A DNA stretch of 64,000 nt from Octopus sinensis (lineage: Eukaryota), in NCBI RefSeq assembly GCF_006345805.1, contig NC_043002.1, forward strand, positions 47,244,001-47,308,000, given 5' to 3'. Below are positions 1,801 through 62,382 of the stretch, one piece after another (position 1 is the stretch's first letter; each line of letters opens with the position of its first letter). A model generated the notes under the pieces. It saw nothing but the letters and a program-made list of their open reading frames with translations, was not told the DNA's origin and searched no databases. The translations under genes were made by a program, and so were the position numbers.

Positions 1801-1889
1801 GCGCTGCAAATCAGAATACAGTGTTCGCCATCATATTTTCGTTTTTATTAGCAGTTCAGATGCTAGAGAAATATATTTCTCTTTCTTAA
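1801..1889 (+). CDS. Terminal coding exon of an unknown gene (paralog 1): xAANQNTVFAIIFSFLLAVQMLEKYISLS*
   Basis: Strong acceptor tttgtattttcttttgtag. It aligns codon for codon with the minus-strand exon 24544-24632, with synonymous and conservative changes and the same stop position. Confidence 0.8.
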
Positions 1890-23364: not shown

Positions 23365-23450
<86 letters not shown>

Positions 23451-24543: not shown

Positions 24544-24632
24544 TTAGGAAAGTGAAATATATCTCTCTAGCATCTGAACAGTTAGTAAAGCAAGAATTAT
24601 TATTGAGAACATTATATTCCGGCTTGCAGCGC
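24544..24632 (-). CDS. Terminal coding exon of paralog 2: GAASRNIMFSIIILALLTVQMLERYISLS*
   Basis: Acceptor gtatttttcttttcttttgtag; gap-free homology to 1801-1889. Confidence 0.8.
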
Positions 24633-25281: not shown

Positions 25282-25364
25282 CATTACACTCCAGAAGTTT
25301 GTTATATCCCTCGTCCACCTCACATTTGGATTTCTCAGCACAGTCAAGATATTCTTTATAATAC
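25282..25364 (-). CDS. Penultimate exon (phase 2 to 1): YYKEYLDCAEKSKCEVDEGYNKLLECN
   Basis: Acceptor ttttcttttctctctcttcctag, donor g|gtaagt; splices in frame to the terminal exon; Cys spacing matches 45656-45744. Confidence 0.8.
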
Positions 25365-28809: not shown

Positions 28810-28851
<42 letters not shown>

Positions 28852-28886
28852 TGATAATAATGATAATAATAATAATAATAATAATA

Positions 28887-28918: not shown

Positions 28919-28919
<1 letters not shown>

Positions 28920-30370: not shown

Positions 30371-30429
30371 GTTTGCTTATTTATTTATTTATTTATTTAT
30401 TATTTTTTTCTCGTATTTTATTCTCATTT

Positions 30430-33400: not shown

Positions 33401-34582
33401 ACAAGAAAGCATCATACTCAGTAACAAAACAGGCAAAGGAATATCTAAGTGAATTCCGAATACAACAAATTTCGGAATTAGAGATAGACATACAAGAAAC
33501 AGGCACAGAAAAAGCTAAGCACATGAAAACCCGTGCTAAACCTGCGGCCTTAGATATTCTGAATGATAAATGGCAAGAAAAACCTCTCTATGGCAAATAC
33601 CCAAAGAGACCGAATAATGCAGATGTTGACAAAGCTCTGACCCATCAATGGCTAATGGCCTCTGGCTTAAAATCTGAAACAGAGGGGTTTATCATAGCAG
33701 CTCAAGATCAATGCCTACCAACAAGAAACTACCAGGCCAACATATTAAAGATCAGAAGCAGTCCAACGTGTCGTGTATGCCAGCAACAAAATGAAACCAT
33801 TGACCATGTGGTCTCCAAGTGCAGTCTTCTAGCGCCTACAGAGTATCTCAACAGACACGTTAGAGCTGCACAATATATTCACTGGGTAATCTGCAAAAAC
33901 CTGGATTTGCCCCATGAAAAAAACTGGTGGGAACACAAACCACCTCCAGTGCTTGAAAATGACCACATCTCATTCCTCTGGAACTTCACCATTCAAACTG
34001 ACAGAAAGATAGATGCAAATAGGCCAGACATCATATTGAAAGACTTCAAACAAAGAACATGCGTCCTCATTGATATGACTGTCCCAATCGATATAAACGT
34101 ATCTGTCAAGACCTACCAAAAACTGAGCAAATATAAAGATCTGGAAACAGAAATCAGCAAAATGTGGAAGCTGAAGACTAAAACGATACCTGTTGTCATA
34201 GGTGCCCTGGGAATGATAGCAAAAGGGGCTGATAGCTACCTAACTCAGATACCAGGAAACCCAAAAATAGCAGAAATTCAAAAGATAGTGCTCATAGGAA
34301 CTGCTCATATCCTACGCAAAATACTTTCTATGTAATCTCAAGGTTTAAAACAAACATAATTTTCGGTTTTTAAGGAAAAAAAAAAAAATTTTTTTTTTTT
34401 TTAGACATTCATTAGTACAACACCAAAAACTCCCCCCCTCCCAAATATATAGCACACTAGGCATAACAACAACATGAACTTCCAACCTGTTGTCTCTTGA
34501 GGTCTCTGGGTGAGACTTGGAGCCAACTTGTACAAATATAAAGCAAAACTCAAACATAGAATAATAATAATAATAATAATAA
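30430..34582 (+). mobile_element. Near full-length R4/Dong-type retrotransposon, several stops and frameshifts, (AAT)n tail
   Basis: KWKSPGKDKIPNFWL, NYRPITCL, IFQGDSLS, HLIYMDDLKLFAK, CCHC finger, RPDI...IDMTVP...KLSKYKDLE restriction-like endonuclease. Confidence 0.92.
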
Positions 34583-35734: not shown

Positions 35735-36313
35735 CTGTATGATCAGTATTTCATAAATATCAATATATAACGAATCATATTAAAAGTAGTATAAATAAAA
35801 CTAGATATCATGCTAGTCCTTATCTGAATGTCTCTTTTATAAAGTTATATTAACTACATTGAATGTTTTCGGGGGATATGGTTCTATATTTACCCGCATT
35901 GCTCATCTCTTGTGCTGTTTAGCGGTTCCTTTAAAGTATTCGTACACTTAGAATATTCAATACCGTTGCAACTGGTATCTGCAAGAGCAAAAAAATTTTA
36001 AAAATTGCGTGTATTGAACAAAACAAATATCAACATATTTCAGTTCTTCCGTTGAGGAATATTCAATAATAGAAAACATTTAAATATGTTTAACCGTACG
36101 CTTGTGTTTGTGTGTTAGTGTGTGTATGTGTGTGTATATGTGTGTGTGTGACTGTAGTTCAACTTTGTAAAAACATTTAAATGTTCATGTATATGTGTGT
36201 GTACACACACACACACACTCATTATACATGAACATTGTTTATTTACTGCACGTTTTTTTAATTATATATATAGGTATGTCATATTTTCAGTTCGTTGGCT
36301 TTTTATTTAATCC

Positions 36314-37109: not shown

Positions 37110-39725
<2,616 letters not shown>

Positions 39726-39790: not shown

Positions 39791-40829
39791 CGAGGGGCGT
39801 TCAATAAGTAATGCCCCTTACCCACTTCCCATAGCAGTAGAGCAACGAAACTTGGCACAGGTATTAGTCTTTTTCTACATAGGAACAACCCAGAGGTACG
39901 CATTTCTCCCATCGTTTGATGCAGTTCTGGAGACCGTTTTCGTAGAAGACCCCAGCTTGGTCCTCCAACCACGACGTGACTTCAGAAATCAAGGCTGCAT
40001 CATCTGAGAAACGCTTTCCTTTCAAAAACAACTTCATTGCTGGGAAGAGGTGAAAATCAGAGGGTGCAAGGTCAGGAGAGTAGGGGGTGGGGGAAGAGTT
40101 CATAGCCGCACGCCTGTGCTTCTGATCTGGCGACACGCGAGTTGTGGACCGGAGCGTTGTCCTGCAGGAGGAGGATGCCTTTGCTGATCTTGCCCCGCCT
40201 CTTGGTTTCGATAGCTTCTCTTAATTTCCTCAAAAGTGAAACATGATAGGCTCCTGTAATTGTGGTACCCTTTGCCAGGAAATCTGTCATCACTACTCCG
40301 TCCTGGTCCCAGAAGACTGTGAGCATGACCTTGCCAGCGGAGGGCTGCACCCTTGCCTTCTTTGGAGGAGGTGAGTCATGGTGCTTCCGCTGCATTGACT
40401 GGGCTTTGGTCTCTGGATCATAGTGATGGACCCAGGTCTCATCCTGTGTAATCAGTCTTTTGAAAAATTTTGACTCATCTTCTTGGCATATCCCTAAATT
40501 CTTGCTTCTGGAATTCTTGCGTTCTTGCTTCTGGAAAAGTGTGAGCAACCTGGAAATCCATCTGGCAGACACCTTTTGCATATGCAAATGGTCATGAATG
40601 ATAGCTTCCACAGACCCGGTACTAATCTTGACCTCATGGGCTATTTGGCGAATAGTTATGCGTCGATCTTCCAAAATGGCAGCCTCAACTTGACGGACAG
40701 ATGCCTCATCAATGGCAGAAGGGGTGCGACCAGATCTGGGAGCTGTTTCCACAGAGTTCCGACCATGTTTGAATTCACGATCAAACAAAGGCAAGTGGGT
40801 CAGAGGCATTACTTATTGAACGTCCCTCG
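39791..40829 (-). mobile_element. Mariner (irritans-like), internally deleted near the 5' end
   Basis: 25-bp TIR cgagggg/acgttcaataagtaatgcc with one mismatch, TA on both sides; ITQDETWVHHYDPE, QDNAPVH, YSPDLAPSDFHLF. Confidence 0.92.
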
Positions 40830-45655: not shown

Positions 45656-45744
45656 CACATCCATAAAAAGCGTATAGATCATGGGTTTTCTGTGATGTAG
45701 GACAGACAGTATTCTTCGAACACTCAACGGCATATGATAGTCGT
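45656..45744 (-). CDS. Internal exon (phase 2 to 1): RLSYAVECSKNTVCPTSQKTHDLYAFYGC
   Basis: Acceptor tttatttttattactttacag, donor g|gtaggt, open frame, C-x9-Y-x4-C end motif. Confidence 0.8.
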
Positions 45745-46261
45745 CTGTAAAGTAATAAAAATAAATTTCTTACCCAAAAGTAAACAATTAAGGAACTGTC
45801 GGTTAATAAACTATATTTCTGATCAGCTTTTAATCGCTAGTCACTTTTTACTTAATAGAAATGAGTTTGTAGTAAACACGAGCATAGATACAGTTCATTT
45901 CGATAACAAACAGATCACTATCTTGGCGGCTTCAGTTGTTGGTAAAATAGATGTTGAATGTAATCCAATAATAGAAATATATACATTTCAATAGCTACTT
46001 CGTACAGTTGGTCCTGATATTTATATCAAAGTATACAACATTATTAAAAATAAATTGTAGCACTGCTTTACAAAATACCATTATACAACTTGTGCCATTT
46101 TAACAAAATATTTTGTCAGCTGAAAATTTACACTTTTTTCAAAAGCTCTCTTTTGTTCTCAGTCGTCTAGATTAGTGCTCTAAACAGTGGTCGCTGCAGA
46201 GCGTCAAGTTGGTGGCAGAACTAGAGGCAATCCAGCGCCCCTACACAAAGAAGACTAACTC

Positions 46262-46343
46262 GATGAAGTAGTTGAGTTACAGGGAGAGTGTACCAGAACT
46301 GAAGCGCTACACCCTGGAGAGAAGACGAGAAATATATGCAGTA

Positions 46344-46345
<2 letters not shown>
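46262..46345 (+). mobile_element. Tiny CR1-type LINE fragment
   Basis: LSYRESVPELKRYTLERRREIYAVIY resembles the RT C-terminus at 7900-8000. Confidence 0.5.
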
Positions 46346-46376
<31 letters not shown>

Positions 46377-46461
46377 CACACACACTCACACGCGCGCGTG
46401 TAAGTGTGTATGTGTGTATATACGCGTATATATACAAATATATATATGTTTATATATATAT

Positions 46462-46497
<36 letters not shown>

Positions 46498-46864
46498 TAA
46501 GGTATGTAGAAAAATACAACATGGACAAGAATGTATAACTCTTAGAAGACGATACAATAAACACGGACAGGACATTCGAAACCCTCAGTCATATATATAT
46601 ATAAATTAAACTAGAGATAAAACCACTATTAGGCAAATCAAACAGTGAAAGACATAAACCAAAACATAAAAATAAATATAATTAATATAATATACAAAAT
46701 ATATAAAATTTAAAATTTATATTTTTATATCTTTAAAATTTAAAATTTATAAATTTTTAAACTTTTAATTTTTAATTTTTTAATCTTTTAAATTATTAAG
46801 TTTTTAATTTATTAATTTTTTTAAGCTATCAAAAATATTAAAAAGTTTAATATAATATAAGTAA

Positions 46865-46966
46865 AACCACTACGTACGTTTCATGGCCATAATTCAATTC
46901 GAATTACAATTAGTTTAAATTCTATTAAAAATTCGAATTATAATTATAGTCAATCTTCAGGTTAAT
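46865..46966 (-). ncRNA. Hammerhead ribozyme motif with long AU-rich stem II
   Basis: CUGAAGA (46960-46954), stem tgactataatt/aattatggcca, GAAAC GUAC GUA; stem I weak. Confidence 0.55.
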
Positions 46967-47849
46967 GATAATAGTTAAATAAATGTTCCTATAGATTATT
47001 ATTATTATTGGTGATAGGTTTTTTTATCATATGTTTGGACTCAAACAACTATGGTTTGGATGCTCTGCCTCCTGTAACATTGTGTAGCACATAAGGTTGT
47101 TGATAATTTGCATAACAGAATATATATTGTGCCTTCAATACTTGTTATAGTATCTGTTGCATGACAAAGATATGTTTGCAACATTGTATAATGTATCTAC
47201 ATACAAGTGTCATGCAATTATGATGGTGAATTATTGAAACATGTGTATGTTCTATAGAGTCGTGAATGCCATACCTGGTTTCTGTTTGATATGTGTGTGT
47301 GTATGTGCGTGTGTGTGTGTGGTGAGGAGTTTTTAGATATATTTATATACTTTATACCTCTTCTTAATTAAACTTTGTCCTATTTAAAACAAAGCAAATA
47401 TTTGATTTACTTCAGCATCTCTTTGTGCAACCATTGTTTGTTGCTTTTTCTATTAATTTTTTCTGCCTTTTCTACCCTTTCTTCCACTTTCTCTTCTTTT
47501 TTCACATATTCACATCCATCTTATTCCTTTCTTCATCATACCTTTTTTTATCCTCCCAACTAAGGTAATAATCAAACGTCCTCACCAAACGTTTTAATGT
47601 GTGAACTAATTTCTGCATTGTGCTAGAAAGACCTGCATATATAAACAGTACAATCTAAATACAATTTGCAGATTGATGAGACCAACTACTGGCCAAAACT
47701 CAGTCACTATCATTAAAATTATACATACATACATACATATATGTGTGTTGTGTGTATTGTGTGTATATGTGTGTGTGTGTGTATTTATGTACTTGATTTG
47801 TGAACTTGAATTAACAAGGCCTTGTTTATTCACAAATAAGGAATATTTA

Positions 47850-47994
47850 TCCACCAATGATGTTGAGCACTCATTCCGAGATGGTTTTGGGTTCGGTCTC
47901 TCTGTACAACACCTTGGGTAAAGCCTTCTACTCTAGCCTTGGATCTTTCAACACCTTGTGGTGAATTTGTTAGATTTAAATTGTGCGAAAGCCT

Positions 47995-48027
<33 letters not shown>

Positions 48028-48290
48028 ATATGCATGTGAGTGTGTTTGTATGTATGCATGTGTATATATATTTTCGAGTGTGTCTTTTTGTTTGCATCTG
48101 TCCTCCACCACTGCTTCTGATCTCTTATTAGTTTGTTTGCATCCCTCTAACTGAGTGGTTTGGCAAAAGAGCCCGATAGAATAAATTCCAGATTTAAAAA
48201 TAAATATTAGGGTTGATTTCTTTGACTAAGTCCTTTAAGGCAATGCCTCAGCACGACCTCTGTCCAATGACTAAAACAAGTAAAAGAAAA
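47850..48290 (+). mobile_element. Degenerate tRNA-derived SINE
   Basis: Diverged match to 11971-12417. Confidence 0.65.
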
Positions 48291-49528
48291 TAAAGAAGTA
48301 TGTATGTATGTGTGTCGAAACACATTAAATTTAAAATATTTATACATTGTGAATAACTGTTGTAGTTGTAATGGATTACAGCTTTGATTCCATTTCATAG
48401 TTTGTGAATAATAGATTATATTCCCGATTATGTTCTGTAGCTTAGAGAGCATTTGTTTAAAGCATTATGTCATTAGATTATATAATAGATTAATTAGAAA
48501 GATTTTATGTTAATGATTTGTAATGTAAGCAGCTATTTGAGATGAACAGGGGAATCTTTTGACTTGTCTTAAATTGTCCTAAATTGCGGTTTATAATCCT
48601 AATACTACGAAATAATATGATTTTTTTCTTTCATTAGTATATATAACCATTCAGATGACTTACCAAAAACGCTGACTTTTTTCTCTACCTCCTATTTTAA
48701 ACTTTTCTGCTATCCACTTGTGCTCCTTATTGGTTTAACAGACTAAAATATCTAACATACACTGAAACCAAAACATGTAAATGTCACAACTCACCTGGGA
48801 ACTCCTTGTTTGTTCAAATCATGCATTTTCTGAACCTTCACTAAATATATGATTGTGACTTAGATTTACCAAAATAACCAAATTCAAATGACCTACTCAA
48901 CTCTACTAACTTTGTATCATTTCAATTTTGTTTCCTACTCAATCTGGAGGAGTTGTTTTGAAATATCTCTTAAGCCAACTTTATTATATTTGCCATGTCT
49001 TTGACTTTAGTTTTACTTCTAACACAAATTTCTCTGAAATACCTTTCACTTGCTTTCTATTTTTCCAGTTTAGCTCTACAAGCTATCACTTAATGTGTTA
49101 ATTAAACTATTAAAATGCACATTCTCTTGGAGTATATAAATACATTTTCTCCCTACTAACATTTGAAAACTCAAGCTATACATTAACCTTACTAATCTCA
49201 GTTCTCAATTTCTCTGATTATCCAGTACAGGCAGATCTGAAAGAGTTATGTTCATTGATCTCCCTTTTGTTCATGTTAAACAGTCTTCAAACAAATGATT
49301 GAAAAACTACATACAACTTCACTTTGAAGTACATTTTCAGCAAACATTAGCTTGTGTTCTGTGTATGTAAATTCAATTGATATCATAAATTGCTATTGCA
49401 GTTGCACTACCTGTGTTAACTGGGACTGAGCAGCAATGAAGATTTTATTCTTATAATATAGACAAGTTTAACCCTATTAGCTGATTTCCTGTTAAGTATC
49501 ATATAGTAATAATAATTGAAATACACAC

Positions 49529-49604
49529 TCGCAATTTTTTTTTCTACCATAATCATCATCCACATTTGCTGTGCAGACCAAGTAGTTTTTCGGGCAACGA
49601 GTGT
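49529..49604 (-). CDS. Internal exon (phase 1 to 2): TRCPKNYLVCTANVDDDYGRKKNC
   Basis: Branch-like ctaac and pyrimidine tract before tatacag; donor ga|gtgtgt is weak but in the same position as in the 57300 exon. Confidence 0.7.
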
Positions 49605-50399
49605 CTGTATATGGCAAAAAAAATGTAGAAATAACATATTTGTTAGCATGAAACAAATGATAAGACTGTAAAAGTGGTAACAAGCATATTTTAAAGACAA
49701 AAATTGTAAAAATGTGACATCTCTACATTTCCTAAGTGTATCTATATTGTACATAAAATGAAACAATTTGAACAAGACAACAGGAAAATTAAATTCAGAT
49801 TGCAACCGTAACAATACCACTTTAAGCTACAATAGGAACAATTTCCTTCAAATTAGAAATGTATATTTTTATTTGGGTTTATGTTGTAAGAACCTTAGAA
49901 AATAAGGTAAGCTGCTGCAAATTCAGACTGTGACATTGTTTTGATTGTCGAGAGACAGTACTCTACTAATATCCACTTGAAAAAGACACCAATGTTATAT
50001 TATGCATCCTAATGTTGCACTTTTCATACCATTTACTACTTAAACTAAAGTATAGTCTTCGTATTAAGTTCAAAATGAAACCACAATTTTGCATTTTTCA
50101 ATATATTCATTATGGCACCAGTAAAGTGCATTAGTGTCTTCTTTTTAAGAGGCCCATAAGTAATGACAAATGGTATACTTGGGTAGAATTACTAGAATAT
50201 TGTCTTCCCCATGGAAATTGTTGCATGAAAAAGTTGCCTTCAACAGCTACTGAGAATTTTTTCTGCTCCCTGACTCTACAAAACACCAATTTTGTCATTT
50301 TAAACAAATTGATTTTTTTCATCATAGCAATTCACATATCTAAGTGATTTTAAATGCCTTATAATGTTCATATGAGACATGGAGTAGCTTTGTGATGTC

Positions 50400-50700
50400 C
50401 TGAGTTATCCAATCTGGATTTGGTTTATTAAAATTTCAATATTTAGGCTGTCTTGAATATTTACAGTCTTTCAGATCAAAATTTTCACTCCTAATCCTAG
50501 TGTACAACTTGTGTTGTGAACAGTCCTCTCACGTATGGAACCAGCATCATAAGCTGCACATATCTTGTTAGCTGTTTGTGCAGGATGTTTTCTTTCTGGG
50601 AGCAAGAGGATGGTAAATGACAAGCTTATTTTCTTATGTTTTCCCTTTTAACATAGAAACAATAGAAATAAACTATGCACACAGAAGTTGTATAAACAGT
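50400..50700 (-). mobile_element. Old mariner 5' fragment
   Basis: RKHPAQTANKICAAYDAGSIRERTV resembles the mariner N-terminal HTH. Confidence 0.5.
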
Positions 50701-50931
50701 TGTGTTGAAATATCATCTTTCATAAAATATGTGTCATGCTTCTGCCACATGAACAATGGAATCCTTGTGTTTAAACCCCTCCAAATGAAAAAATGGTACA
50801 AACTTTATTCCAGCTCAGTGTAATATTTTCAGAAATATAATATTTTATCAGTGTTAGATGATCATTCATCATTTTTTGATGAGTAAATTAAAGTTCTATA
50901 AGTATTGCTTTTATACATGTAACATTAACTA

Positions 50932-52151
50932 TAAGGCTGTCGGGAAAGTTCTGATCATTTTTTAATATACAAAAATGGAATATAAATAACCGTTCACTAA
51001 ATTGTATTCAATGAAATAATTTCCATTATTATTAATGACCTTTGCCCGTCTGTCAGGCAATTTAAATATTTCACCAGCATAAAATTTGACTGGTTTTGAA
51101 GAAAAAAGTTATCTAGATGCATTTTGACTCCATCTAAATTGTTAAATGTTTTTCTTAGAGTTCTGTAGAGACAAAAGCAAGTGGTATCTGGTTGGTGCAA
51201 TGTCATGTAACTTTGTTTGAGTAGCCAAAGACATGTGATCGGGCATTGTCTTGTTGGAACATCACCCTTTTCCTGCCGGTAATCTCAGGCCTCAATTCTT
51301 TGATTTTTTGGGCTCAAATTGGCCAGCTGATTATGGTACACCTCAGAATTAATGATCTGGTTTTGTGGGAGAAGCTCATAATAATGTCTTTATGATCCCA
51401 CCAAACACAAAGCATAGGTTTCTGGCATGGATATTTTTCTCTGATTGCTATTTTGAGGGATCCTCACGCAAACCCTAGTAGCTTTTTCACACTACGTTTT
51501 CTTACACAATCCATTTTTCATCTCCAGTCACGAGTTGTTTAAAAAATTATGCTTTCATTCTGTTTCAAAAGCATATCACAAATGGAATACTGGTCCAATT
51601 CTTTTCTGAGAGTTTGTGAGTAACCCATACATTATAGTGAGAAATGTATCCTAGCTTCACTAGGTGTTCATGAGCCATACTTTTAGAAACTTCCAACTCC
51701 TCTGCAAGTTCTCTAGTCGTGATATTTGAGTTTTCTTCAATTTTTGCCTTCAAAACATCTTCATCCAATTTTGAAGGTCATCCACTGTAACTGTCTTCTT
51801 CCAAGCTAAACTCTCCAGCTCTAAACTTTGCAAATCATCCTCGAACATTTGATTCATCTACAGCATCATTACCATAAATTTCACGAATGTTTTGCAAGTT
51901 TTCGCAAAACTTTCTCCTTTTTCAAAAAAAGAAAAGCATTACAATGCAAATATGAAATGTTTGATTATCCATTTCAAATGTCAATAAAGGGTAACCAGAA
52001 TGAAAGATAAAACTGTTTTTTAGTCAGGAACAAAGAAGAGATGCCCTACCACTTCAAGCAACACCAAAGCTTTAACTGTGTTACGTTTCAGGTGTGTTCA
52101 ATGAAGCATTAAAAGATTTAGCTTAAAAACACTCAGAACTTTCAGACAATA
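50932..52151 (-). mobile_element. Old degenerate mariner
   Basis: ITTRELAEELEVSKS.AHEHLVKLGY...WVTHKLSEKN; partial TIR core gaaagttctga at both ends. Confidence 0.75.
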
Positions 52152-53172
52152 TAACATTTTAAGAACTTGAAGGTTGGTGAAAATTGTTTTGCCAATAATG
52201 AAATCAATGATAACCACTTGAACAAATGGACCACACTGAACTCTTATGAAATTTCTTCACTCACTTTCAGGTTCTTTCTGACATTAAGATATGTGATTCA
52301 TATTAAATCTTGACTACTGTGTGGATTAAAATCTTCATTGAAAGATCACTAGTATATCATTGCAACTACTAAATTAAATTCTACTAAATGGGTGAAATAT
52401 TGTAACATCACAATGTTATAGTGGTTAGCTGCACCAAAACTAACTATGTGGTTTACTGTAGATGTGATACTCGAATCTCATAGACAGTTTCACAACTTTT
52501 TCCGTCTTCTATATTAGATATATATAATGCAATATCCTGAACACTGTGTGAACTGAGGTCCCTGTTGATAGGTCACTGGTATTCCAATGTAGTTACTTAA
52601 TCTAAGTGTACTAATTTCGTTGTTCAAAATTTGTGATGTCACATTGATGTAGTGTTTAAATACAGCTATACTGTTTATAGTATATGAGGTATTCAGATCC
52701 TGCAGAAGATGTTACAAATTTTCCCATCTTCTATATTAGTTACATATTTTGTTCTTGATGAAAACCAGAATGTTGATGATTAATAGGGGATGATTTGCAG
52801 TCTGTATTGAAATGTCATTAATATGTTTTGAGTTTTATTTATTGAGAGAATTATGTCTAGAATTTACATCAATAATAAACAGTGCATTATTTTGTGTTTC
52901 TTCTTACTTCATCTTTTAAAAAAAACTTGTGAACATATTATTTGCATCTAATGTAAAAAATGAACTTTAAAATTAGTACATTTGAACAAGTGCTATGTAG
53001 GCTCAATATGACTAAAATTGCATGATTATAATGATGTTCTTTGAAAATTATTATAAAGTGAGTTCTCAAAACAGAGTGAGAGATTAGTGATTTATGGAAC
53101 TGAATGCAAGACATCAGTTACTAAATCATCAAATAAAGATAGCAAATATTATTTAAATGTATAGAAGCTTAC

Positions 53173-53261
53173 CACATTTTAAAGCTTTGTATTCTGACTC
53201 CATGTCGTCTGGTATCTTGCAATTCTTATTGTTTAAATTTGATTTGTATGCTTTCAATGTT
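53173..53261 (-). CDS. Internal exon (phase 2 to 1): TLKAYKSNLNNKNCKIPDDMESEYKALKC
   Basis: Acceptor atattttttag, donor g|gtaagc, C-x9-Y-x4-C end motif. Confidence 0.8.
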
Positions 53262-54722
53262 CTAAAAAATATATCGCAATTAAAGTAGGAATTCAACATT
53301 TTATTTTACAAAAGATTAGAAGAAATTGTAATGCTGAGAACAAAGGACCTGACTGCATCTTCTGAATCTGACAAGTACTTGCTATGTAGTAGGTTTGATT
53401 CATACAACCGTACTTTCCCCCTAAATATTTGTGACTTTGTACCCATTCCAGAAGTTAAGTATTGTTAAAAGTGAACAGAAATTATTAGTGGATAGAATAA
53501 GTGTGCACAAATAGGATTTACAATAAAAGAATATCAATGTAAATTTACCATTTTAACAGAAGGTGGCAAGAGGAAAATAATATCTTATATTCATTTAAAA
53601 CTAAATAATTTTAGGCTACAATACATGGCATAATTTCCTCCAGCAGATGACATGTTCTTACTATATCAATTTTCAGAGAAGTGAGAATGAAATATCATCC
53701 ACAACAACATCTTAACTCATCACATATCAGGACAAAATTAAATACTGAATGTCTTTAGGTTTAGTGATGAATTATTTTTCTACTAATTGAAGCATACTAC
53801 TGTTCTGATAAGCTTAATATAAAGTTGATGGTAATATCCTGATGAAATATTTAATATATTCGGATAATTATTTGATAAATTGAGGAACGAAAATTAATTC
53901 TACAAACACTGTAGTTAGTTTATCTGGAGAGCTCTTCAACAAAAGATAAACAGATTTCTTTAAGGAAAAAGTCCATTGATGAAATGCAATAGCTGCCATT
54001 GAAAAATTGCACCACTATACAATTCATTGTAGATATAAACTAGATTTGAAAGTTTTCTCACCACTGTAATTTCTCTATTCTCTTGAGGATTTTATCCTTA
54101 GTAGGAGGTGAATTGCAATTTTAGAACTTATATTCCTCTTAGTGGAACCTAAACATATTTGTAATCATCTGTTAAAACAGATATCCGTTGTATTGTGTCT
54201 CCACTTTAACTCTCCATGCTACATTACACGACAAGGTAGATAGTAAAGTTAAGTACCTTGCTTGACTAAGAATCCTTTGTATGTTTATTGTGGCAATTAA
54301 AGCAGTGGGTTTTGTCAACGATTTGCAGAGCTAATTATACATCAATAATTGATAAGAAACATTCTCATTTCTTTATCAACACTGTCGATGGACCACTCAA
54401 AGAGGAAGGACTGTTTCAACGAAGTCGCGTCTCGTCCTTACCTTCTAAACGCAGAGTAGATGAAACAGGGACGACTGAAGAAGGAGAATATTCTTTATGT
54501 TGTATGTCTCGTTTCCTTGTTTTTTTCGTTGTTTGAAAAAAAAAAGTTTGTTTCTATGTTTTCGTTTCGCATTGTGTTCAACGTTTTTTGATATCCTGTA
54601 CCCATATATGCTTGTATATATACATATATATGCAGGTATGTACATATTTGTATGTATATATGCATATATTTATATATCATTTATATTATATATATGTATA
54701 TATATATATATACACATATGTA

Positions 54723-54764
<42 letters not shown>

Positions 54765-54765
<1 letters not shown>

Positions 54766-56000
54766 GAACAGCCATGCTACATGGCAGCGAAACATGGGCC
54801 GTGACTGCTGAGGACATGCGTGAGCTCGTGAGGAATGAGGCCAGTATGCTCCGGTGGATGTGTAATGTCAGTGTACATACTCGACAGAGCGTTAGCACCT
54901 TGAGAGAAATGTTGTACCTGAGAAGCATCAGTTGTGGTGTGCAAGAGAGACGATTGCGCTGGTATGGTCGTGTGGCGAGAATGGATGAAGATAGGTGTGT
55001 GAGAAAGTGCCAATCCCTAGCGGTTGAGGGAACCCGTGGGAGAGGTGGACCCAGGAGGACCTGGGACGAGGTGGTGAAGCACGACCTTCGAACTTTGGGC
55101 CTCACTGAGGAAATGACCAGAGACCGAGACCTTTGGAAGTATTCTGTGCGTGAGAAGACCAGGCAGGACAAGTGAGCCCAGCCCACTTATGAATGCCTTT
55201 CCTCCCTTGGACACAAAGACCGGCTGAGGCAAGCGAAGTCGATATAGAACCTCATCCGACGACAGACACCCATGCCAACCCCCCATGCTTGCGAAGACAT
55301 GTTGGGGCAAGTGAAATTGAAATCGAAACCGAATTGAACCAGCCAGGATCCCTGGCCTGGTGGTACGTAAAAAGCACTATCCGACTCATGGCTGTGGCAC
55401 GTAAAATACTCCAATGCGACCGTACGACAGGCACCCATGCCAACCTCCTTTGCTTGTGAAGACATGTTGGGGCAGGCGAAATCGAAATCGAATTGAACCA
55501 GCCAGGATCCCTGGTCTGGTGGTACGTAAAAAGCACTATCCGACTCGTGGCCGTGGCACGTAAAATACTCCAATGCGACCGTACGACAGGCACCCTTGCC
55601 AACCTCCTTTGCTTGTGAAGACATGTTGGGGCAAGCAAAATCGAAATCGAATTGAACCAGCCAGGATCCCTGGTCTGGTGGTACGTAAAAAGCACTATCC
55701 AACTCGTGGCCGATGCCAGCACCGCCCGTCTGGCTTCCGTGCCGGTGGCACATAAAATACACCAATCTGACCGTGGCCATTGCCAGCCCCGCCTGGCACC
55801 TGTGCAGGTGGCACGTAAAAAGCACCCACTACACTCACGGAGTGGTTGGCGTTAGGAAGGGCATCCAGCTGTAGAAACATTGCCAAATTAGACTGGAGCC
55901 TGGTGCAGCCTTCTGGCTTCCCAGAACCCCGGTCGAACCGTCCAACCCATGCTAGCATGGAGAACGGACGTTAAACGACGATGATGATGATGATGATGAT
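54765..56000 (+). mobile_element. 5'-truncated RTE-clade LINE (RT C-terminus + 3' UTR + (GAT)n tail)
   Basis: [30 protein letters not shown]; UTR with three repeats of about 160 bp. Confidence 0.9.
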
Positions 56001-56339
56001 GCATGTTCAATGTAGAAATTATATCCTTGGATAATATCAATTTCTTAGAGTCATGTGCAAATTTTGTACAAAAGATTGCAAGTTGAAACCTCTAGATAAA
56101 CTCATTACAGTTAAGAGAGATTTTTATAGTGACAAGAGAACAGCACGTCAGTAAAATTAAAAGCATGAAAGTAAATGCAAAAGCTCAAAGTATTTAGTAT
56201 TATGAAGGCAGAGGTAACATAAGTGGTGCAGTGGGATACTTAATCAATCTCTAGAAATATCAATGTGATAAACTATGGAATAAAGATAAATATATTGTAT
56301 TTTGTTCTGCTAGTTTCTCATTAGTTTCAGGCCATGATG

Positions 56340-56770
56340 GAGCACAGCTATTAGCTTTCTCTCTTGATTATTTTAAACTAATTTTCTGGCTTTGGCTCTG
56401 GAATTGGTCCAGTTAAGTAGTGAGTTGGACAGAGCTGCCCTTCTTTGCATTTGTTGATGTGATGTGGGTTCATCTGGTATATCAGATAAAAATTTGTGCA
56501 AGTGTTCTTTGAATACACCCACTGCTACACACCATAGATAACTGAGGCTTTTAAGCAAAGTTTTGAAAAGTTGTGGGCCTTTGAATCCTAAACTGTTACA
56601 GTATTGGGTTGTTACTTTGGATGGAGAATGTTAAATCTTTGGTACTGTGTAGTGGCATCCAGTCTGGTGTCTGGTATATCTTTCAATTCCAAAGTTGGGT
56701 GCTTAACTTTCCAGGATCTTCAATATATACATATCACTGCATATCATTTATGCCTTCTCTCCAAAAGTCT
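56340..56770 (-). mobile_element. CR1-type LINE 3' fragment
   Basis: VFKEHLHKFLSDIPDEPT...RRAALSNSLL. Confidence 0.7.
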
Positions 56771-57299
56771 TAGCTTTTTCAGACTCTCTCAATAGATCAA
56801 CTGCTGCACCAAGGCAATATTGTTGATCTAGTGGTGTTTATATTTATCATTTTTTAAATACCACATTCATAAGTCTAACATATGCCTATAAATTGAAATG
56901 TTAACATTTTTTGTAAGCATATTAAAAAAATTTGAAAAACGCTTCCCTGTCTCTTACTTATCTTCACTAAGCCAAAAGTGCAAGTTAGAAAAATGTTTTA
57001 CTAAGTGAAGATTTTTTTAAAAGAGTGATTGATGACAGTTATTAATCTTTACTTTTGTAATATTAATATTTTATTGGGTTCATGTTCATGTCAGTGATAT
57101 GTAACAATTATTTTCCCTAAAATCTAGCATAAATCATAACAAATACATTGAGGAGCTAAATTTCATTATCTAAAATAGAACACTAATATTTTATTGACAC
57201 CTAATTCACTAACATGTTTTCCATATTTTTCTGATGAACATTCCTCTTATAATATTGGATTAAACATATCAATGTACTTACATAACAAAAATTACTTAC

Positions 57300-57363
57300 T
57301 TGCATTTCTGATCATCTGTCTCACCAGTCAAAGTTGGTTTTGGAGTCTTATGACAGAGTCGTT
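57300..57363 (-). CDS. Internal exon (phase 1 to 2): RLCHKTPKPTLTGETDDQKC
   Basis: caatcacag acceptor, consensus donor aa|gtaagt; phases fit both neighbouring exons. Confidence 0.72.
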
Positions 57364-58937
57364 CTGTGATTGGTATGGATTATAAATTTACACATCAGAA
57401 ATAAAACTTAATTTGAACACTTGCCAAGAAACATGTTAACTTTGAAAAAGTAACATTCTTTCAACAAAAAAAGATTGTACTTACTTTTTCCCAAAAAGCA
57501 ACATCTTTACTGAAGAAAGAATTCAACAATCACAAAATCCTTTTTGTCAACTAGTAACTTGCTTACAGTCTTCAAGCAATACCTTACAATTATTTACTGG
57601 TGTAAGTCTATACATAACAAGTTCATAAGGACATATCGGCTATCACTTGTCATACAAACTAGAGTATAAATGACAAAGTGACCCAGACAATGCAATCAGT
57701 ATTCTGCAGTTTTATCTGATGCATAGAATGGATTAGATAAAGAAGAGAAAAAAGAGTACTGCATGATATATTTCTCTTGCTTTTTCATTCAACAGGATGG
57801 AGTTGATAAGGAATAATCTTTGTAGTTACTTAACCCACTAGAAATAATAATCAAATATTTTGTTAACCACTCCCTCTCATTAATAAAATGAAAGCTATAA
57901 TTCATATTATAATGCTAGATACACGCTACGTCCCCATCCCCCCAAAAGTGAACTAATGATGTGTCGAATACTTTTGATTGTAGGTAATAAATGCAATCAG
58001 TACTGACCTAGGGCTAAACAACAGCAATAACATTTAGAAGAAGAAGAAAAAGTTGATGATTTTGGTATAAAATCATTGTCCTGATATTTTGCATTCTTTA
58101 ACCTGTACCATAACAATATTAACTAATTTTATTTACAGTAAATACTAGTGCCACAAAATAGACAAAATAATACAATGTTCATTAAAATAAAAACTAATAT
58201 CTCAGAGAAAATCATGAAATAAAGAGAGAAACTCCTTGATTCTCAAACCTTGACAGATATTCTAATAATCTGAAAGTTACAACAAAATCTTGAAATTGAT
58301 TGTAATATGAATGTCTAAAAGCCATTGATTACTTTCTTACAACAATCATTACATTTATACACTTCCTCACTGATGCAACTGATTACAGTTTTTCCTTCAT
58401 GGTGCAAGTAATGGTCATGACATTTTTTTGCCTCATTTCATACAACTTTGACCTTAAAGTATTTCAAAATTTCCTATTGTTATTCTTTTTCACATTGAAC
58501 AAGTTCTACAAAAAGGAAAAACATTATCCATAACATTGCAATAACTATAGTAATGCATTGAAGCAAGAAACCTAAATGCAAAGTTTCTCATTGGATTTAT
58601 TCAATCTTCTATCATTAAAGAGACTCCTGTTTTGAAATAGAAGCTCTTTTGTCGTATTGCTATTAAACAATGAAAATTTATCTCTTCAACCAGGTCTGAA
58701 AATACATAAAGAATTCCAAATGTAGCCAAGGTGAGTTTGTAATAATGTTTTAACCTGATCATAATACTTCATAATATCTCTCTTTCATCATCCCCACAAG
58801 AATAACTCCAGAAAGAGTATATTGAATAAATTACTTTCTTTATTTTCAAACCACATACATAATATTTATAGAAAGTATAAGATACTTAAAATACCCCATG
58901 ACGGGTATTAATATTGTCAAGTTTCTCTTCTATTTGA

Positions 58938-59579
58938 CGACCTTCGATCTTTAGGTCTCACCGAGGAAATGACCAGAGACCGAGGCCTTTGGAAGTATGC
59001 TGTGCGTGAGAAGACCCGGCAGGACAAGTAAGGCCATAACCCGTGGCCTCTACCTGGGACGTAGTCAGTCAACCTATGCATACCTTACCTTCTTGGGACA
59101 CAAAACTCTACTTGTGAAGACCTGTTAAGGCAAGTGAAAATCAAAATCAAAATCGAAATCGATCAACATCAATGGAATTTGTAGTTGTGATACCAGTGCC
59201 AGTGGCACGTAAGAGAACCATCCGAACGTGGCCGTAGCCAGCACCATCCTGACTGGCCTCCGTGCCGGTGGCACGTAAAAAACACCATCCGATCGTGGCT
59301 GTTGCCAGCCTCGCCTGGCCTCCGTGCCGGTGGCACGTAAAAAGCACCATCCGAGCGTGGCCGTTTGCCAGCCTCGTCTGGCACCTGTGTCAGTGGCACG
59401 TAAAAAGCACCCACTACACTCACGGAGTGGTTGGCGTTAGGAAGGGCATCCAGCTGTAGAAACACTGCCAGATCAGACTGGGCCTGGTGCAGCCTTCTGG
59501 CTTCCCAGGCCCCACTTGAACCGTCCAACCCATGCTAGCATGGAAAGCGGACGTTAAACGATGATGATGATGATGATGA
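58938..59579 (+). mobile_element. Second RTE 3' end
   Basis: Homologous to 55080-56000; (GAT)n tail; repeats of about 62 bp. Confidence 0.88.
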
Positions 59580-60465
59580 ACTTCAATTTATTTTTAACTT
59601 CCTAAAATATGAATAACTAATTCACAGAACCCTAAAAAATGAACAACAAGGAAAAGATTTCACATGACTCATTACAATTGTCATTTTGCAACAAGTCTCT
59701 GGAGGGTCAAAATGTACTGTAGAAAAATTGGTTAGGATAAATAAGAAATGTCCTCTCTACATCATCAAATCACTGAATATTGTGATAAAATTTTACAAAG
59801 TGTAAGATATATCAAACAAAATAAAATACCAACACATTAGAGATGCAATGGTATGGTTAAATTTGTATTTCATACTTAAGCTCAGGTTGATTTGTACTTG
59901 AAATTAAAGTTAAAATAAAGGATTATGCTATTTGTTTCTACTAAGCAGTCTAGTAGTAACTGATCATGTATAACCTGACCAAAGATATAACTACAGCTGA
60001 ATTTAATAAAAGTAAATATTCATAAAAACTAAGATTATATTATAATTACAACAATTAACAAGTATATTAAAGTAAAATTTCGGCAAAGGCATTCCAACTA
60101 AGAAATAATGTGAAAACCGAAAATAAACTACGTTAAAAAACACAAAAGAGACAAATGTTTGCAATAATTACATATAAAGGCAGAATTGAAAATGAAACCG
60201 GGATGAGTACAAAAATAGACTTGGGTATCCCGAGTAAGTGAAACAAATATGTAAATGTTTAAAAGTCAGTTATGTAATGTCATGGGCTAATTTTTGAAAC
60301 GATAATGGTAATTTTCGTAAAGAAAGGAAATTTTACATGCATCTATATGCATGTATTCGATTGAACAGATACAACTACATTCATATACTTCTCTTCCGTA
60401 AAATTTCAAAAAGTATTTTTGTTTACTTTTTGAAATGATTTCAATTTTAATAGCTCACATATATA

Positions 60466-61672
60466 TAGGGTGCATCAACAATTTGAGGACAATTTATAAT
60501 TTAAGTAAAATAATCATATTTGATAAACCAATATAATATTTTTTTTTAGAATTAGGTATACATATTCTTACATATACATCGCAAAAATAAATTCAATAAA
60601 ACTGTTATCAGCCTCATTAATATCTCGATATAGCTGCTGAAACGACTAAATGTGTTGATCAGGTGATTTTCACCGATATCGGCCTTAATGTTCCCAATAG
60701 CAGGCATCATAGAGTCCTTCAGTATTGTGGGCATTTTTATTAATCTCTCGCTTAACGACACTCCTATCGTAGTACTCATGGGGCGGGGTTAAATAAGGTG
60801 GACGAGGAGACCAAATATTAGTGGTAACATGATCTTGAAAATGTTCAGCCATTCACCCTTTAGTCTTGCAGGTTGTGCAAGAGGGAGCAGAATCTTGCTG
60901 GAATATGTACATCTTGCCCCGAGCATCTCCCTTGATCCAGGCCTTGACACGTTTCCAATGACTCGATGTAGATTGTTGCATTGCCCCTAAGACCTTGCAG
61001 GAAAAGTGAGGAGCTCTCATTGCTAATGACCCCGAAGACCATCCCAGACGATAGGAACTTGGTGTGCATAACAGCAGGGATTTCAGTGAGGCTGGCACAG
61101 AACCATCTGTCATTTCTCCTGTTCACTTCATATCTTGGACTAAGGCCTTCTCATCCAAAGCATATCGGACTCCTCGGAGAGCTTGAGTAACAATTCGACC
61201 GTATAACATTGTTTTCCCGCGTCTTATCGGGTATGAATCACCCTTTTCTCATAGCATAGGGTTTTTATCCGATGTTTTCATGCATAATACGTCTAATGGA
61301 GATGATTGGCAATGGGTCTCACTGGCTTCACGGTAATCTCGTTGATGATGCCTCGGACTTGCTGGACAAACTGAACTTTTCTGAGAAAGTCTGACCATTG
61401 AGAATATGTTGTCATTTTGGCCACCGAAGACACATTTCCGTTAGAGGACTAGAGCTATTTTCTATTCATAAACAAGAAGGATCTGGTGACATTTAAGAAG
61501 GGTGCCATCTGAGAATCACTGTAGTTGGCAACTAAAACGAGGAGGACGGCATGCCTTTTCATTGTATGCACTAATTTTGAAGCTTCTATGTTGGGATTTG
61601 TATAAAGAAAGGACAGGTTTGGATAACTTATCATTCTTAAGAGCTTTGGTTTTAAATAGCTGACTCACCCTG
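60466..61672 (-). mobile_element. Degenerate maT/DD37D-like Tc1-mariner element
   Basis: DRW...TKF.SSGMVFGVISNE, YIFQQDSAP; termini (c/t)agggtg with TA flanks. Confidence 0.75.
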
Positions 61673-61785
61673 TATATGTTTTCTATTAAGAAAAGTACCT
61701 TTCTTCAATGCTAACATAATAATTTCATAAAATTAGTCTGTTCAGTTATAATAAGAAGCTATAATTATTCTTTCTAATTTTTGCA

Positions 61786-61980
61786 TAAGGCCAGCAATTT
61801 TGAGGAGAGAGGACAAGCCGATTACATCATCTCCTGTACTGGGCTGTTAATTATTTTATTGACGTCGAAAGAATGAAGAAACATGTCGAGTTCGGTGGAA
61901 TTTGAACCCAGAACGTAGAGACAGGAGAAATGCTGCAGAGCATTTTGTCCGATGCGCTATCGATTCTCCTAGCTCGATAT
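61786..61980 (-). mobile_element. Degenerate SINE
   Basis: Reverse complement of the 716-929 family. Confidence 0.65.
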
Positions 61981-62228
61981 TTAGTGACTGACTTTTAAGC
62001 ATATACATATTGGTTTCGCTTATCCAGTATACCCAAATCTATTTTGTGTTTTTCCCCGTATTGATTTGCTTTCATTATCAATCCACAGTTACATGCACAT
62101 AAAGTCCATCTCCATTGAACAACAACGATAAAGAATAGTGAACGTAAGAGAAGAAAGCCTTAAACAGTATTCATTAAACAATACCGCTGTACTTTTCTAA
62201 ATTTTGCTTTAAAAAAGATGTTACTTAC

Positions 62229-62335
62229 CGCAATCATTGTCGTCGTATTTTTTTTGCCATTCAGTTGGCATTTTACATATGTAGTTAGTATAACTTCGTC
62301 TCCTCAAAACGCATGAATATTCATCATCCAGATTC
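62229..62335 (-). CDS. Internal exon (phase 2 to 1): NLDDEYSCVLRRRSYTNYICKMPTEWQKKYDDNDC
   Basis: Acceptor cttttactctccatcag, donor g|gtaagt, C-x9-Y-x4-C end motif. Confidence 0.82.
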
Positions 62336-62382
62336 CTGATGGAGAGTAAAAGTATGACTAAATGTTATATATATCTACATAC

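What the first reader, a model, noticed from the sequence alone, without database searches (positions are those of the whole stretch)
45656..62335. Hidden multi-exon gene built from a repeated Cys-rich module (minus strand)
Seen: five short exons with GT-AG sites (62335-62229, 57363-57300, 53261-53173, 49604-49529, 45744-45656) alternate phases 2-1, 1-2, 2-1, 1-2, 2-1. They splice into one open frame: NLDDEYSCVLRRRSYTNYICKMPTEWQKKYDDNDC-E-RLCHKTPKPTLTGETDDQKC-K-TLKAYKSNLNNKNCKIPDDMESEYKALKC-D-TRCPKNYLVCTANVDDDYGRKKNC-E-RLSYAVECSKNTVCPTSQKTHDLYAFYGC. Three exons end in exactly C-x9-Y-x4-C-G|GTA. The full module is C-x6-C-x13-C-x8-C-x5-C-x14-C, encoded by an exon pair bounded by phase-1 introns. 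The ORF track shows none of this as a gene. Established: phase 1-1 bounded modules typify extracellular domains spread by exon duplication. Inference: a lineage-specific disulfide-bonded surface protein family that I do not recognise.
Basis: partly seen in the sequence, partly recalled or inferred. Interest (0 to 1): 0.8.

Follow-up and report, generated by a model that had tools for sequence, protein, structure and literature searches.

The report
Annotated octopus cysteine-rich surface protein gene
The five predicted exons are real: they are exons 7-11 of a 14-exon Octopus sinensis gene, LOC115213072, that is already annotated as "uncharacterized protein" and encodes a fast-evolving, probably membrane-tethered protein built from six cysteine-rich helical modules.

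Summary
All five exons have AG/GT sites and alternating 2-1/1-2 phases. The 141-aa peptide equals residues 157-297 of RefSeq LOC115213072 (Octopus sinensis, 382 aa). So the gene is not hidden.

- **Extent.** Three more coding exons lie in the window (35978-35894, 25364-25282, 24632-24544 with the stop). Six lie beyond the right edge. The gene has 14 coding exons over 81 kb.
- **Architecture.** Six exon pairs bounded by phase-1 introns encode six ~55-aa modules, usually with six Cys. They sit between a signal peptide and a short hydrophobic C-terminal tail that looks like a GPI signal.
- **Family.** Detectable relatives are all octopod: three O. sinensis paralogues in a conserved +,+,- cluster, three in O. 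bimaculoides and one in Argonauta. The four genes mapped share one exon-phase plan. All 32 Cys are invariant in the five full-length members.
- **Evolution.** Ortholog dN/dS is about 0.9.
- **Classification.** UniRef labels two orthologues "GDNF/GAS1 domain-containing". Pfam, PDB profile searches, hhalign against GFRα1 and Foldseek did not confirm this.

Verdict: a real, ordinary, already annotated gene from an uncharacterised lineage-restricted family. Function is inferred only.

The parts
62229..62335 (-). Coding exon 7 of LOC115213072 (107 nt, phase 2-1). Second half of module M3: NLDDEYSCVLRRRSYTNYICKMPTEWQKKYDDNDC.
57300..57363 (-). Coding exon 8 (64 nt, phase 1-2). First half of module M4, which lacks Cys 2: RLCHKTPKPTLTGETDDQKC.
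53173..53261 (-). Coding exon 9 (89 nt, phase 2-1). Second half of module M4, which lacks Cys 4.
49529..49604 (-). Coding exon 10 (76 nt, phase 1-2, GTGTGT donor). First half of module M5.
45656..45744 (-). Coding exon 11 (89 nt, phase 2-1). Second half of module M5.
35894..35978 (-). Coding exon 12 (85 nt, phase 1-2). First half of module M6, with the invariant NSTR sequon: TSCNGIEYSKCTNTLKEPLNSTRDEQC.
25282..25364 (-). Coding exon 13 (83 nt, phase 2-1). Second half of module M6: YYKEYLDCAEKSKCEVDEGYNKLLECN.
24544..24632 (-). Terminal coding exon 14 (89 nt including the TAA stop). Encodes (G)AASRNIMFSIIILALLTVQMLERYISLS*, small residues followed by a short hydrophobic tail; this looks like a GPI-attachment signal.
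1801..1889 (+). Terminal coding exon of the neighbouring paralogue LOC115213476 (P0001), 100% identical to its C-terminus. The two genes lie tail to tail, with stop codons about 22.7 kb apart.

Best explanation
The five exons are exons 7-11 of the 14 coding exons of Octopus sinensis gene LOC115213072. The window is CM016864.1:47,244,001-47,308,000 and the gene is on the minus strand. The window holds exons 7-14, that is residues 157-382.

Protein layout:
- A signal peptide (exon 1).
- Six tandem ~51-61-aa modules, each encoded by one exon pair (phase 1-2 then 2-1) and bounded by phase-1 introns.
- A C-terminal exon encoding small residues (N-G-A-A-S), a short spacer and a ~15-residue hydrophobic stretch.

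Modules M2-M6 are demonstrably homologous. The consensus is x3-C-x7-C-x8..15-C-x2-L-x5-C-x5..11-C-x9-Y-x4-C. The array arose by duplication of an exon pair, and whole-gene duplication later gave a three-gene cluster.

Inferred mechanism (not shown):
- The protein enters the secretory pathway and forms 16 disulfides that staple small helical modules.
- It is tethered to the outer face of the plasma membrane, most likely by a GPI anchor.
- It acts as a binding protein or co-receptor. Its surface residues evolve fast while the Cys scaffold stays fixed.

This works like the GPI-anchored helical Cys-rich co-receptors GFRα and GAS1. Membership of that family was not demonstrated here.
For: - The source name is 'uncharacterized protein LOC115213072 [Octopus sinensis]'.
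- **Gene-model support.** The same 14-exon, same-phase plan is found in P0001, P0005 and O. bimaculoides P0008. The cluster order and orientation (+,+,-) match in both species.
- **Module homology.** HMMs built from one module hit the others at E = 1e-4 to 2e-7. The 33-sequence module alignment puts all six Cys in register.
- **Secretory and surface features.** The two strongest hydropathy peaks are at residues ~13 and ~365. NST at residue 318 is invariant.
- **Scaffold constraint.** 32 of 32 Cys are invariant in the five full-length members, and none has an extra Cys.
- **Fast evolution.** P0006 versus P0008 shows 66% aa identity and dN/dS 0.94, about 1.0-1.1 in M3-M6. For non-Cys codons of the mature protein it is 0.95, with a 95% bootstrap interval of 0.66-1.39.
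- **Fold.** The AF2 model built with the family alignment is all-alpha, with pLDDT 70-87 over residues ~30-245.
- **Restriction.** An exhaustive HMMER search of 1.84 billion representatives found only octopod proteins.
Against: - No transcript data could be consulted here. Expression rests on the RefSeq model and on conservation.
- GPI anchoring is judged by eye and by hydropathy, not with a dedicated predictor. The tail ends in a polar ERYISLS and is unusually well conserved for a cleaved signal, so a short transmembrane anchor remains possible.
- dN/dS near 1 would also fit relaxed constraint.
- No ligand, tissue or phenotype is known.
- Module M1 is assigned only from its exon lengths, phases and Cys spacing. 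It does not align significantly to the module HMM.
Confidence: 0.9

Rival explanations
1. The family is a true, highly divergent member of the GFRα/GAS1 (GDNF/GAS1 domain) superfamily. Pairs of modules would form GFRα-like domains, and the protein would serve as a GPI-anchored co-receptor for a secreted ligand.
For: - UniRef names the O. bimaculoides relatives P0007 and P0008 'GDNF/GAS1 domain-containing'.
- The overall design matches: signal peptide, all-alpha Cys-rich ectodomain, GPI-like tail.
- Module pairs M1+M2 and M3+M4 carry 10 Cys in ~110 aa, the number quoted for GFRα-like domains (PMC4349606).
- By eye, C-x6-C ... C-x8-C-x5-C in module M5 resembles C1-x6-C2 ... C4-x8-C5-x4-C6 of GFRα1 D2, whose sequence was verified. 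This is a lead only.
Against: - The Pfam-A scan of all seven full proteins and of the window peptide gave no GDNF hit, even at E <= 10.
- Family and module profiles found no GFRα, GFRAL or GAS1 chain in the PDB.
- hhalign of both profiles against verified GFRα1 D2-D3 gave a probability of 0.2-0.3%.
- Foldseek of the AF2 model against the PDB gave nothing at E <= 0.001 and no GFRα entry in the top 50.
- There is no CxC motif.
- The repeat unit is 55 aa with 6 Cys, not ~100 aa with 10.
Confidence: 0.2
2. The C-terminal tail is a transmembrane anchor with a 7-residue cytoplasmic end, or another functional peptide, rather than a cleaved GPI signal.
For: - The tail is the best-conserved part of the protein. 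LLAVQMLEKYISLS is nearly invariant from Octopus to Argonauta.
- It shows 2 non-synonymous and 0 synonymous differences between orthologues.
- It ends in polar or charged residues rather than a purely hydrophobic run.
Against: - The hydrophobic run is only ~15-16 residues and is interrupted by Q, which is short for a membrane span.
- It is preceded by a classic small-residue cluster (N/S-G-A-A) and a short spacer.
- GFRα1, a known GPI protein, also ends in a polar ...LTETS (recalled; not part of the sequence verified).
Confidence: 0.2
3. The locus is a decaying or neutrally evolving gene copy, and dN/dS near 1 reflects loss of function.
For: dN/dS is 0.94 between orthologues and 0.75-1.07 between paralogues.
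Against: - Reading frames, all 26 splice sites and phases are intact in the four genes mapped in two species.
- All 32 Cys are invariant despite 34-50% divergence elsewhere. Under the 34% divergence seen between orthologues, keeping all 32 by chance has a probability of about 0.66^32, roughly 2e-6.
- The signal and tail exons are under clear constraint.
Confidence: 0.04
4. The exon-like pieces are fragments of a dispersed repeat or transposon that happen to be open.
For: The window is full of transposons and microsatellites.
Against: - The exons with 300-nt flanks have no second DNA copy in the window, apart from microsatellites in the flanks.
- They match a single-copy protein model exactly.
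- The paralogues are whole genes with the same architecture.
Confidence: 0.01

Closest known systems
RefSeq LOC115213072 (Octopus sinensis) with paralogues LOC115213476 and LOC115212988; O. bimaculoides LOC106882236, LOC106871163 and LOC128248134; Argonauta hians GAB1608345.1
   Same: The window encodes residues 157-382 of LOC115213072 at 100% identity. The four genes mapped (the three O. sinensis genes and LOC106882236) share the 14-exon plan. All 32 Cys are invariant in the five full-length members. All except LOC106871163, whose model stops at ...ECSGK, carry the conserved C-terminal tail.
   Different: Nothing differs for LOC115213072 itself. Paralogues are 50-53% identical to it and the O. 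bimaculoides orthologue is 66% identical. All are named 'uncharacterized' or 'hypothetical'.
GFRα1-4, GFRAL and GAS1 (GDNF/GAS1 domain, GPI-anchored co-receptors)
   Same: Signal peptide, tandem all-alpha disulfide-rich extracellular domains and a GPI-type C-terminus. UniRef attaches this domain name to two orthologues.
   Different: The repeat unit here is ~55 aa with 6 Cys and no CxC, against ~100 aa with 10 Cys. No Pfam, PDB-profile, hhalign or Foldseek similarity was detected here. No RET or ligand link is known.
Mosaic extracellular proteins built by exon shuffling or duplication of phase 1-1 modules (EGF, LDLa, Sushi and similar)
   Same: Modules are bounded by phase-1 introns, tandemly duplicated and disulfide-stabilised.
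   Different: Each module is split by an internal phase-2 intron. The module is helical and matches no Pfam family.
CCCH (tristetraprolin-type) zinc fingers
   Same: The C-x8-C-x5-C spacing gave the only PDB profile hits (E = 0.0016 to 0.9).
   Different: This is a spacing coincidence. No conserved His follows at +3. The protein has a signal peptide, a glycosylation sequon and an even number of invariant Cys. The hits are marginal.

Membership tests
Octopod LOC115213072-like family (uncharacterised) | Identity or close similarity over the full length to annotated members | tested here: met
   The window peptide equals P0006 residues 157-382. Profile hits reach E = 1e-143 to 1e-200.
Octopod LOC115213072-like family (uncharacterised) | 14 coding exons with phases 0-1, then (1-2, 2-1) six times, then 1-0 | tested here: met
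   The pattern is identical in P0006, P0001, P0005 and P0008.
Octopod LOC115213072-like family (uncharacterised) | 32 invariant Cys, N-terminal signal peptide and conserved hydrophobic C-terminal exon | tested here: met
GFRα/GAS1 (GDNF/GAS1 domain, Pfam PF02351) | Significant match to the Pfam GDNF model | tested here: not met
   No such hit at E <= 10 for the window peptide or for P0001-P0003 and P0005-P0008. The UniRef name for P0007 and P0008 suggests another InterPro member database does match, which I could not check.
GFRα/GAS1 (GDNF/GAS1 domain, Pfam PF02351) | About 10 conserved disulfide-forming Cys per domain (PMC4349606), including the CxC pair seen in GFRα1 D2 and D3 | tested here: not met
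   Modules have 6 Cys (M1 and M4 have 4) in ~55 aa and no CxC anywhere. The GFRα1 pattern was read from the sequence verified.
GFRα/GAS1 (GDNF/GAS1 domain, Pfam PF02351) | Profile or sequence similarity to solved GFRα or GFRAL chains | tested here: not met
   hmmsearch of A1 and A2 against PDB sequences gave no GFRα hit. hhalign against GFRα1 D2-D3 gave a probability of 0.2-0.3%. The profiles are shallow, so this is a weak negative.
GFRα/GAS1 (GDNF/GAS1 domain, Pfam PF02351) | Five-helix all-alpha domain fold superposable on GFRα D2 or D3 | tested here: inconclusive
   The AF2 model is all-alpha but only moderately confident (mean pLDDT 62.7). Whole-chain Foldseek against the PDB gave no hit at E <= 0.001.
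GFRα/GAS1 (GDNF/GAS1 domain, Pfam PF02351) | GPI anchorage at the cell surface | tested here: inconclusive
   The C-terminus has small residues, a spacer and a ~15-aa hydrophobic run. No GPI predictor or experiment was available.
GFRα/GAS1 (GDNF/GAS1 domain, Pfam PF02351) | Binds a GDNF-family ligand with RET, or Hedgehog | not testable with these tools
   A biochemical property.
CCCH zinc finger (tristetraprolin type) | C-x8-C-x5-C-x3-H metal-binding motif in a nucleic-acid-binding protein | tested here: not met
   Only the spacing of three Cys matches (E = 0.0016). The His is absent or not conserved, and the protein carries a signal peptide.
Dispersed repeat or transposon fragment | Multiple DNA copies, or similarity to transposon proteins | tested here: not met
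   There are no second copies of the exons in the window. Pfam gave no hit.

The most novel reading that the evidence does not exclude
The ~55-aa six-Cys helical module, encoded by a 1-2/2-1 exon pair, may be a protein domain not represented in Pfam or the PDB and unrelated to GFRα. If so, the three-gene cluster would be an octopod innovation: a GPI-anchored recognition-protein family whose exposed residues evolve at or above the neutral rate on an invariant 16-disulfide scaffold. Candidate roles include gamete, chemotactile or immune recognition.
Probability: 0.35. Interest if true: 0.45.

Novelty: already known. Interest (0 to 1): 0.25.

Why it matters
For the scan, this case shows that reading splice sites, phases and Cys spacing from raw sequence can recover real eukaryotic exons exactly. 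The locus itself adds nothing to the annotation, because RefSeq already holds the identical model.

What is not in the literature I could search is any description of the family:
- a conserved three-gene cluster, found so far only in octopods;
- an unusually regular exon-pair/module architecture;
- 32 invariant cysteines;
- an ortholog dN/dS close to 1.

That combination is typical of recognition proteins under diversifying pressure. It could make the family a modest candidate for work on cephalopod-specific cell-surface biology. It would also settle whether invertebrate "GDNF/GAS1 domain" labels of this kind are real.

Tried and rejected
1. The word-indexed homologue search with the 141-aa peptide returned nothing, although the identical protein is in that collection. 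This was a false negative of the prefilter. The exhaustive search found the family.
2. Pfam scans of the peptide and of all family members gave no family.
3. PDB sequence searches with the peptide found only a chance PEX1 match. The family profile found nothing. The module profile found only CCCH zinc fingers, rejected as a spacing coincidence.
4. The single-sequence AF2 model of the 197-aa C-terminal part was poor (pLDDT 50.9) and was not used for fold search.
5. Foldseek of the alignment-based model gave only helical-repeat noise.
6. hhalign against GFRα1 D2-D3 was negative.
7. The candidate 'CPKHFHVC' stretch at 25681-25658 has no acceptor site and was rejected as an exon.
8. Literature searches for the LOC identifiers, and for octopus with GAS1 or GDNF-receptor terms, found nothing relevant.
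9. I tried to place module M1 on the module HMM in order to infer a C1-C5 disulfide. The alignment was not significant. Only the joint loss of Cys 2 and Cys 4 in M4 is kept, as a tentative hint of a C2-C4 bond.
10. P0004 (E = 8e-4) is a translated minisatellite, not a relative.
Full report
**1. Checking the observation**

Reading the minus strand at the five stated intervals shows each exon preceded by a pyrimidine-rich tract and AG, and followed by GT. The donors are GTAAGT, GTAAGT, GTAAGC, GTGTGT and GTAGGT. A script joined the five pieces, 425 nt in all. The lengths 107, 64, 89, 76 and 89 nt produce the stated phase alternation 2-1, 1-2, 2-1, 1-2, 2-1. A six-frame pattern scan found C-x9-Y-x4-C on the minus strand only at the 3' ends of the three named exons, each followed by G|GTA.

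**2. Extending the model inside the window**

I listed all minus-strand AG...GT intervals that are open in a 1-2 or 2-1 phase and contain at least two Cys. Apart from microsatellite and transposon noise, two further candidates with strong splice sites stood out:
- 35978-35894 (phase 1-2, TSCNGIEYSKCTNTLKEPLNSTRDEQC)
- 25364-25282 (phase 2-1, YYKEYLDCAEKSKCEVDEGYNKLLECN)

The exons with 300-nt flanks have no other DNA copy in the window. Only microsatellites in the flanks match elsewhere.

**3. Identity of the gene**

The first searches were negative. Pfam gave no family for the peptide. The word-indexed protein search found nothing, which later proved to be a false negative.

The exhaustive HMMER search of 1.84 billion representatives with the 197-aa seven-exon peptide found three proteins at E = 5e-46 to 7e-36, covering residues 2-197. 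A fourth, spurious match was a translated minisatellite. The three proteins are uncharacterised proteins of Octopus sinensis, O. bimaculoides and Argonauta hians.

A second search with P0001 returned P0006, "uncharacterized protein LOC115213072 [Octopus sinensis]", 382 aa. The contig carrying P0006 overlaps the window. The window equals CM016864.1:47,244,001-47,308,000, and the gene lies on the window's minus strand.

An exact spliced alignment gives 14 coding exons over 81 kb. Exons 12-14 are at 35978-35894, 25364-25282 and 24632-24544 (with the stop). Exons 1-6 lie 1.6 to 41.7 kb beyond the window's right edge. The gene is thus real, but it is already annotated.

**4. Architecture**

The phases run 0-1, then (1-2, 2-1) six times, then 1-0. 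Six exon pairs bounded by phase-1 introns therefore encode six modules, M1-M6, of 51-61 aa.

HMMs built from one module across the family detect other modules. Examples are M3 to M4 at 2e-7, M2 to M6 at 2e-6, and M5 to M6 at 3e-5. An alignment of 33 M2-M6 sequences puts six Cys in register. Its consensus is x3-C-x7-C-x8..15-C-x2-L-x5-C-x5..11-C-x9-Y-x4-C.

M4 lacks Cys 2 and Cys 4 together, which hints that they pair; this is inference. M1 shares the exon lengths and phases and a compatible Cys spacing, but it does not align significantly to the module HMM.

Exon 1 encodes a hydrophobic signal-like N-terminus. Exon 14 encodes N-G-A-A-S, a short spacer and a hydrophobic stretch of about 15 residues ending in ERYISLS. 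These two ends are the strongest hydropathy peaks of the protein. The NST sequon at residue 318 is invariant. I read the tail as a GPI-attachment signal. This is inference, and a short transmembrane anchor is the alternative.

**5. The family**

Detectable relatives are all octopod:
- three O. sinensis genes (P0005, P0001, P0006)
- three O. bimaculoides genes (P0007, P0002, P0008)
- one Argonauta protein (P0003)

In O. sinensis the three genes lie at 47.05-47.35 Mb in the order and orientation P0005(+), P0001(+), P0006(-). Their O. bimaculoides counterparts lie at 45.53-45.79 Mb in the same order and orientation. The cluster therefore predates the split of the two species.

The last exon of P0001 is in the window at 1801-1889 (+), tail to tail with the gene of interest.

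All four genes I could map have the same 14-exon phase plan. All 32 Cys are invariant in the five full-length members, and none has an extra Cys.

**6. Rate of evolution**

P0006 and its orthologue P0008 are only 66% identical. Nei-Gojobori dN/dS is 0.94 overall. It is 0.46-0.60 in M1-M2 and about 1.0-1.1 in M3-M6. The signal and tail exons show no synonymous change at all. For non-Cys codons of the mature protein, dN/dS is 0.95, with a bootstrap 95% interval of 0.66-1.39.

The combination of intact frames, intact splice sites and an invariant Cys scaffold argues against a dead gene. It fits fast or diversifying change of exposed residues on a fixed scaffold. A formal test needs more species.

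**7. What kind of protein?**

UniRef names P0007 and P0008 "GDNF/GAS1 domain-containing". That would make the family GFRα/GAS1-like, meaning GPI-anchored helical Cys-rich co-receptors. According to PMC4349606, GFRα-like domains carry 10 conserved disulfide-forming Cys, and GAS1 is GPI-anchored. I tested this in five ways.
- **Pfam.** No GDNF hit for any member, even at E <= 10.
- **PDB profile searches.** The family profile (A1) and the module profile (A2) found no GFRα, GFRAL or GAS1 chain. The only hits were CCCH zinc fingers, through the C-x8-C-x5-C spacing. I reject these as coincidence.
- **hhalign.** I recalled the GFRα1 D2-D3 sequence and verified it as 100% identical to PDB 6q2n_C. hhalign of A1 and A2 against it gave probabilities of 0.2-0.3%.
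- **Structure.** An AF2 model with the family alignment is all-alpha, with moderate confidence (mean pLDDT 62.7; 70-87 over residues ~30-245). Foldseek against the PDB gave no match at E <= 0.001 and no GFRα in the top 50.
- **Cys signature.** The pattern differs: 6 Cys per 55 aa and no CxC.

By eye, part of the spacing (C-x6-C ... C-x8-C-x5-C) resembles the first half of a GFRα domain. Module pairs M1+M2 and M3+M4 hold 10 Cys. These are leads, not tests. I therefore say the protein may work like a GFRα/GAS1-type tethered binding protein. I do not file it as a member of that family.

**8. Mechanism**

Shown:
- the gene structure
- the modular duplication
- the secretory-type termini
- the invariant Cys
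- the fast evolution
- the conserved cluster

Inferred:
- translocation into the ER
- formation of 16 disulfides stapling small helical modules
- GPI tethering at the outer membrane face
- a role as a ligand-binding or co-receptor surface protein whose exposed residues diversify

No data on tissue, ligand or phenotype were available. Literature searches for the gene identifiers, and for octopus with GAS1 or GDNF-receptor terms, were empty.

**9. Verdict**

The "hidden gene" claim fails because the identical model is in RefSeq. The locus is an ordinary, already annotated member of an uncharacterised, octopod-restricted gene family, so interest is low to moderate. The remaining open question is whether the module is a divergent GFRα-like half-domain or an undescribed fold, and what the proteins bind.

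Noticed in passing
window 1801-1889 (+), and CM016864.1 47.05-47.35 Mb: The terminal exon of the paralogue LOC115213476 lies tail to tail with LOC115213072, about 22.7 kb away. It belongs to a three-gene cluster (+,+,-) whose order and orientation are conserved in O. bimaculoides.
   Followed up: yes
window 24440-24760 (-) versus 1672-1992 (+): The last ~110 nt of the final intron and part of the 3' flank (a ...TTACG.ATCACTTTCGCATAA... block) are about 80% conserved between the two paralogues, although coding dS between them is ~0.5. The tail and signal exons show zero synonymous differences between orthologues. Either gene conversion or a conserved non-coding element at the 3' end could explain this.
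   Followed up: partly
window 62336-62364 (-), and P0002 residues 14-24: The N-terminus of the O. bimaculoides model LOC128248134 (P0002, 243 aa) aligns to translated intron sequence just upstream of exon 7. That RefSeq model looks like a truncated prediction that starts inside an intron.
   Followed up: partly
window 55259-55712: A 159-bp minisatellite (2.8 copies, 93% matches) lies in the intron between exons 8 and 9. Its translation produced the spurious database hit P0004, a 384-aa repeat 'protein'. A related 62-bp array lies at 59196-59411.
   Followed up: partly
window 12988-13446, 16104-16571 and 18319-18786 (-); 19094-20070 (+); 40072-40809 (-): Several mariner/Mos1-type transposase fragments (Pfam HTH_48, Transposase_1). 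Three near-identical copies are spaced 2.2-3.1 kb apart, which suggests a local tandem duplication.
   Followed up: partly
window 7710-10386 (-) and 27166-34335 (+): LINE-type retroelement remains: an endonuclease/exonuclease/phosphatase domain, RVT_1 and zf-RVT. The 27-34 kb region holds two partial copies of the same element inside the intron between exons 12 and 13.
   Followed up: partly
window 4002-6564 (+) and 22520-22921 (+): Long ORFs with no Pfam hit. They contain a YIG...-type motif reminiscent of GIY-YIG endonucleases of Penelope-like elements. This is memory-based and was not tested.
   Followed up: no
window 23700-23927: A (GAA)76 tract lies about 620 bp downstream of the stop codon of LOC115213072, possibly within or next to its 3' UTR. 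Large (TA)n arrays lie at 20236-20856 and 23189-23426.
   Followed up: no
window 37798-38062; 38569-38643 (+) versus 39287-39213 (-): A perfect 132-bp x2 tandem repeat ending in (TATC)n. Nearby, a stretch of at least 75 bp is present in inverted orientation about 0.6 kb apart, seen as the same translated string on both strands.
   Followed up: no
The word-indexed homologue search missed a 100%-identical database protein when queried with the 141-aa spliced peptide. Negative results from that tool with short Cys-rich queries should not be read as absence.
   Followed up: yes
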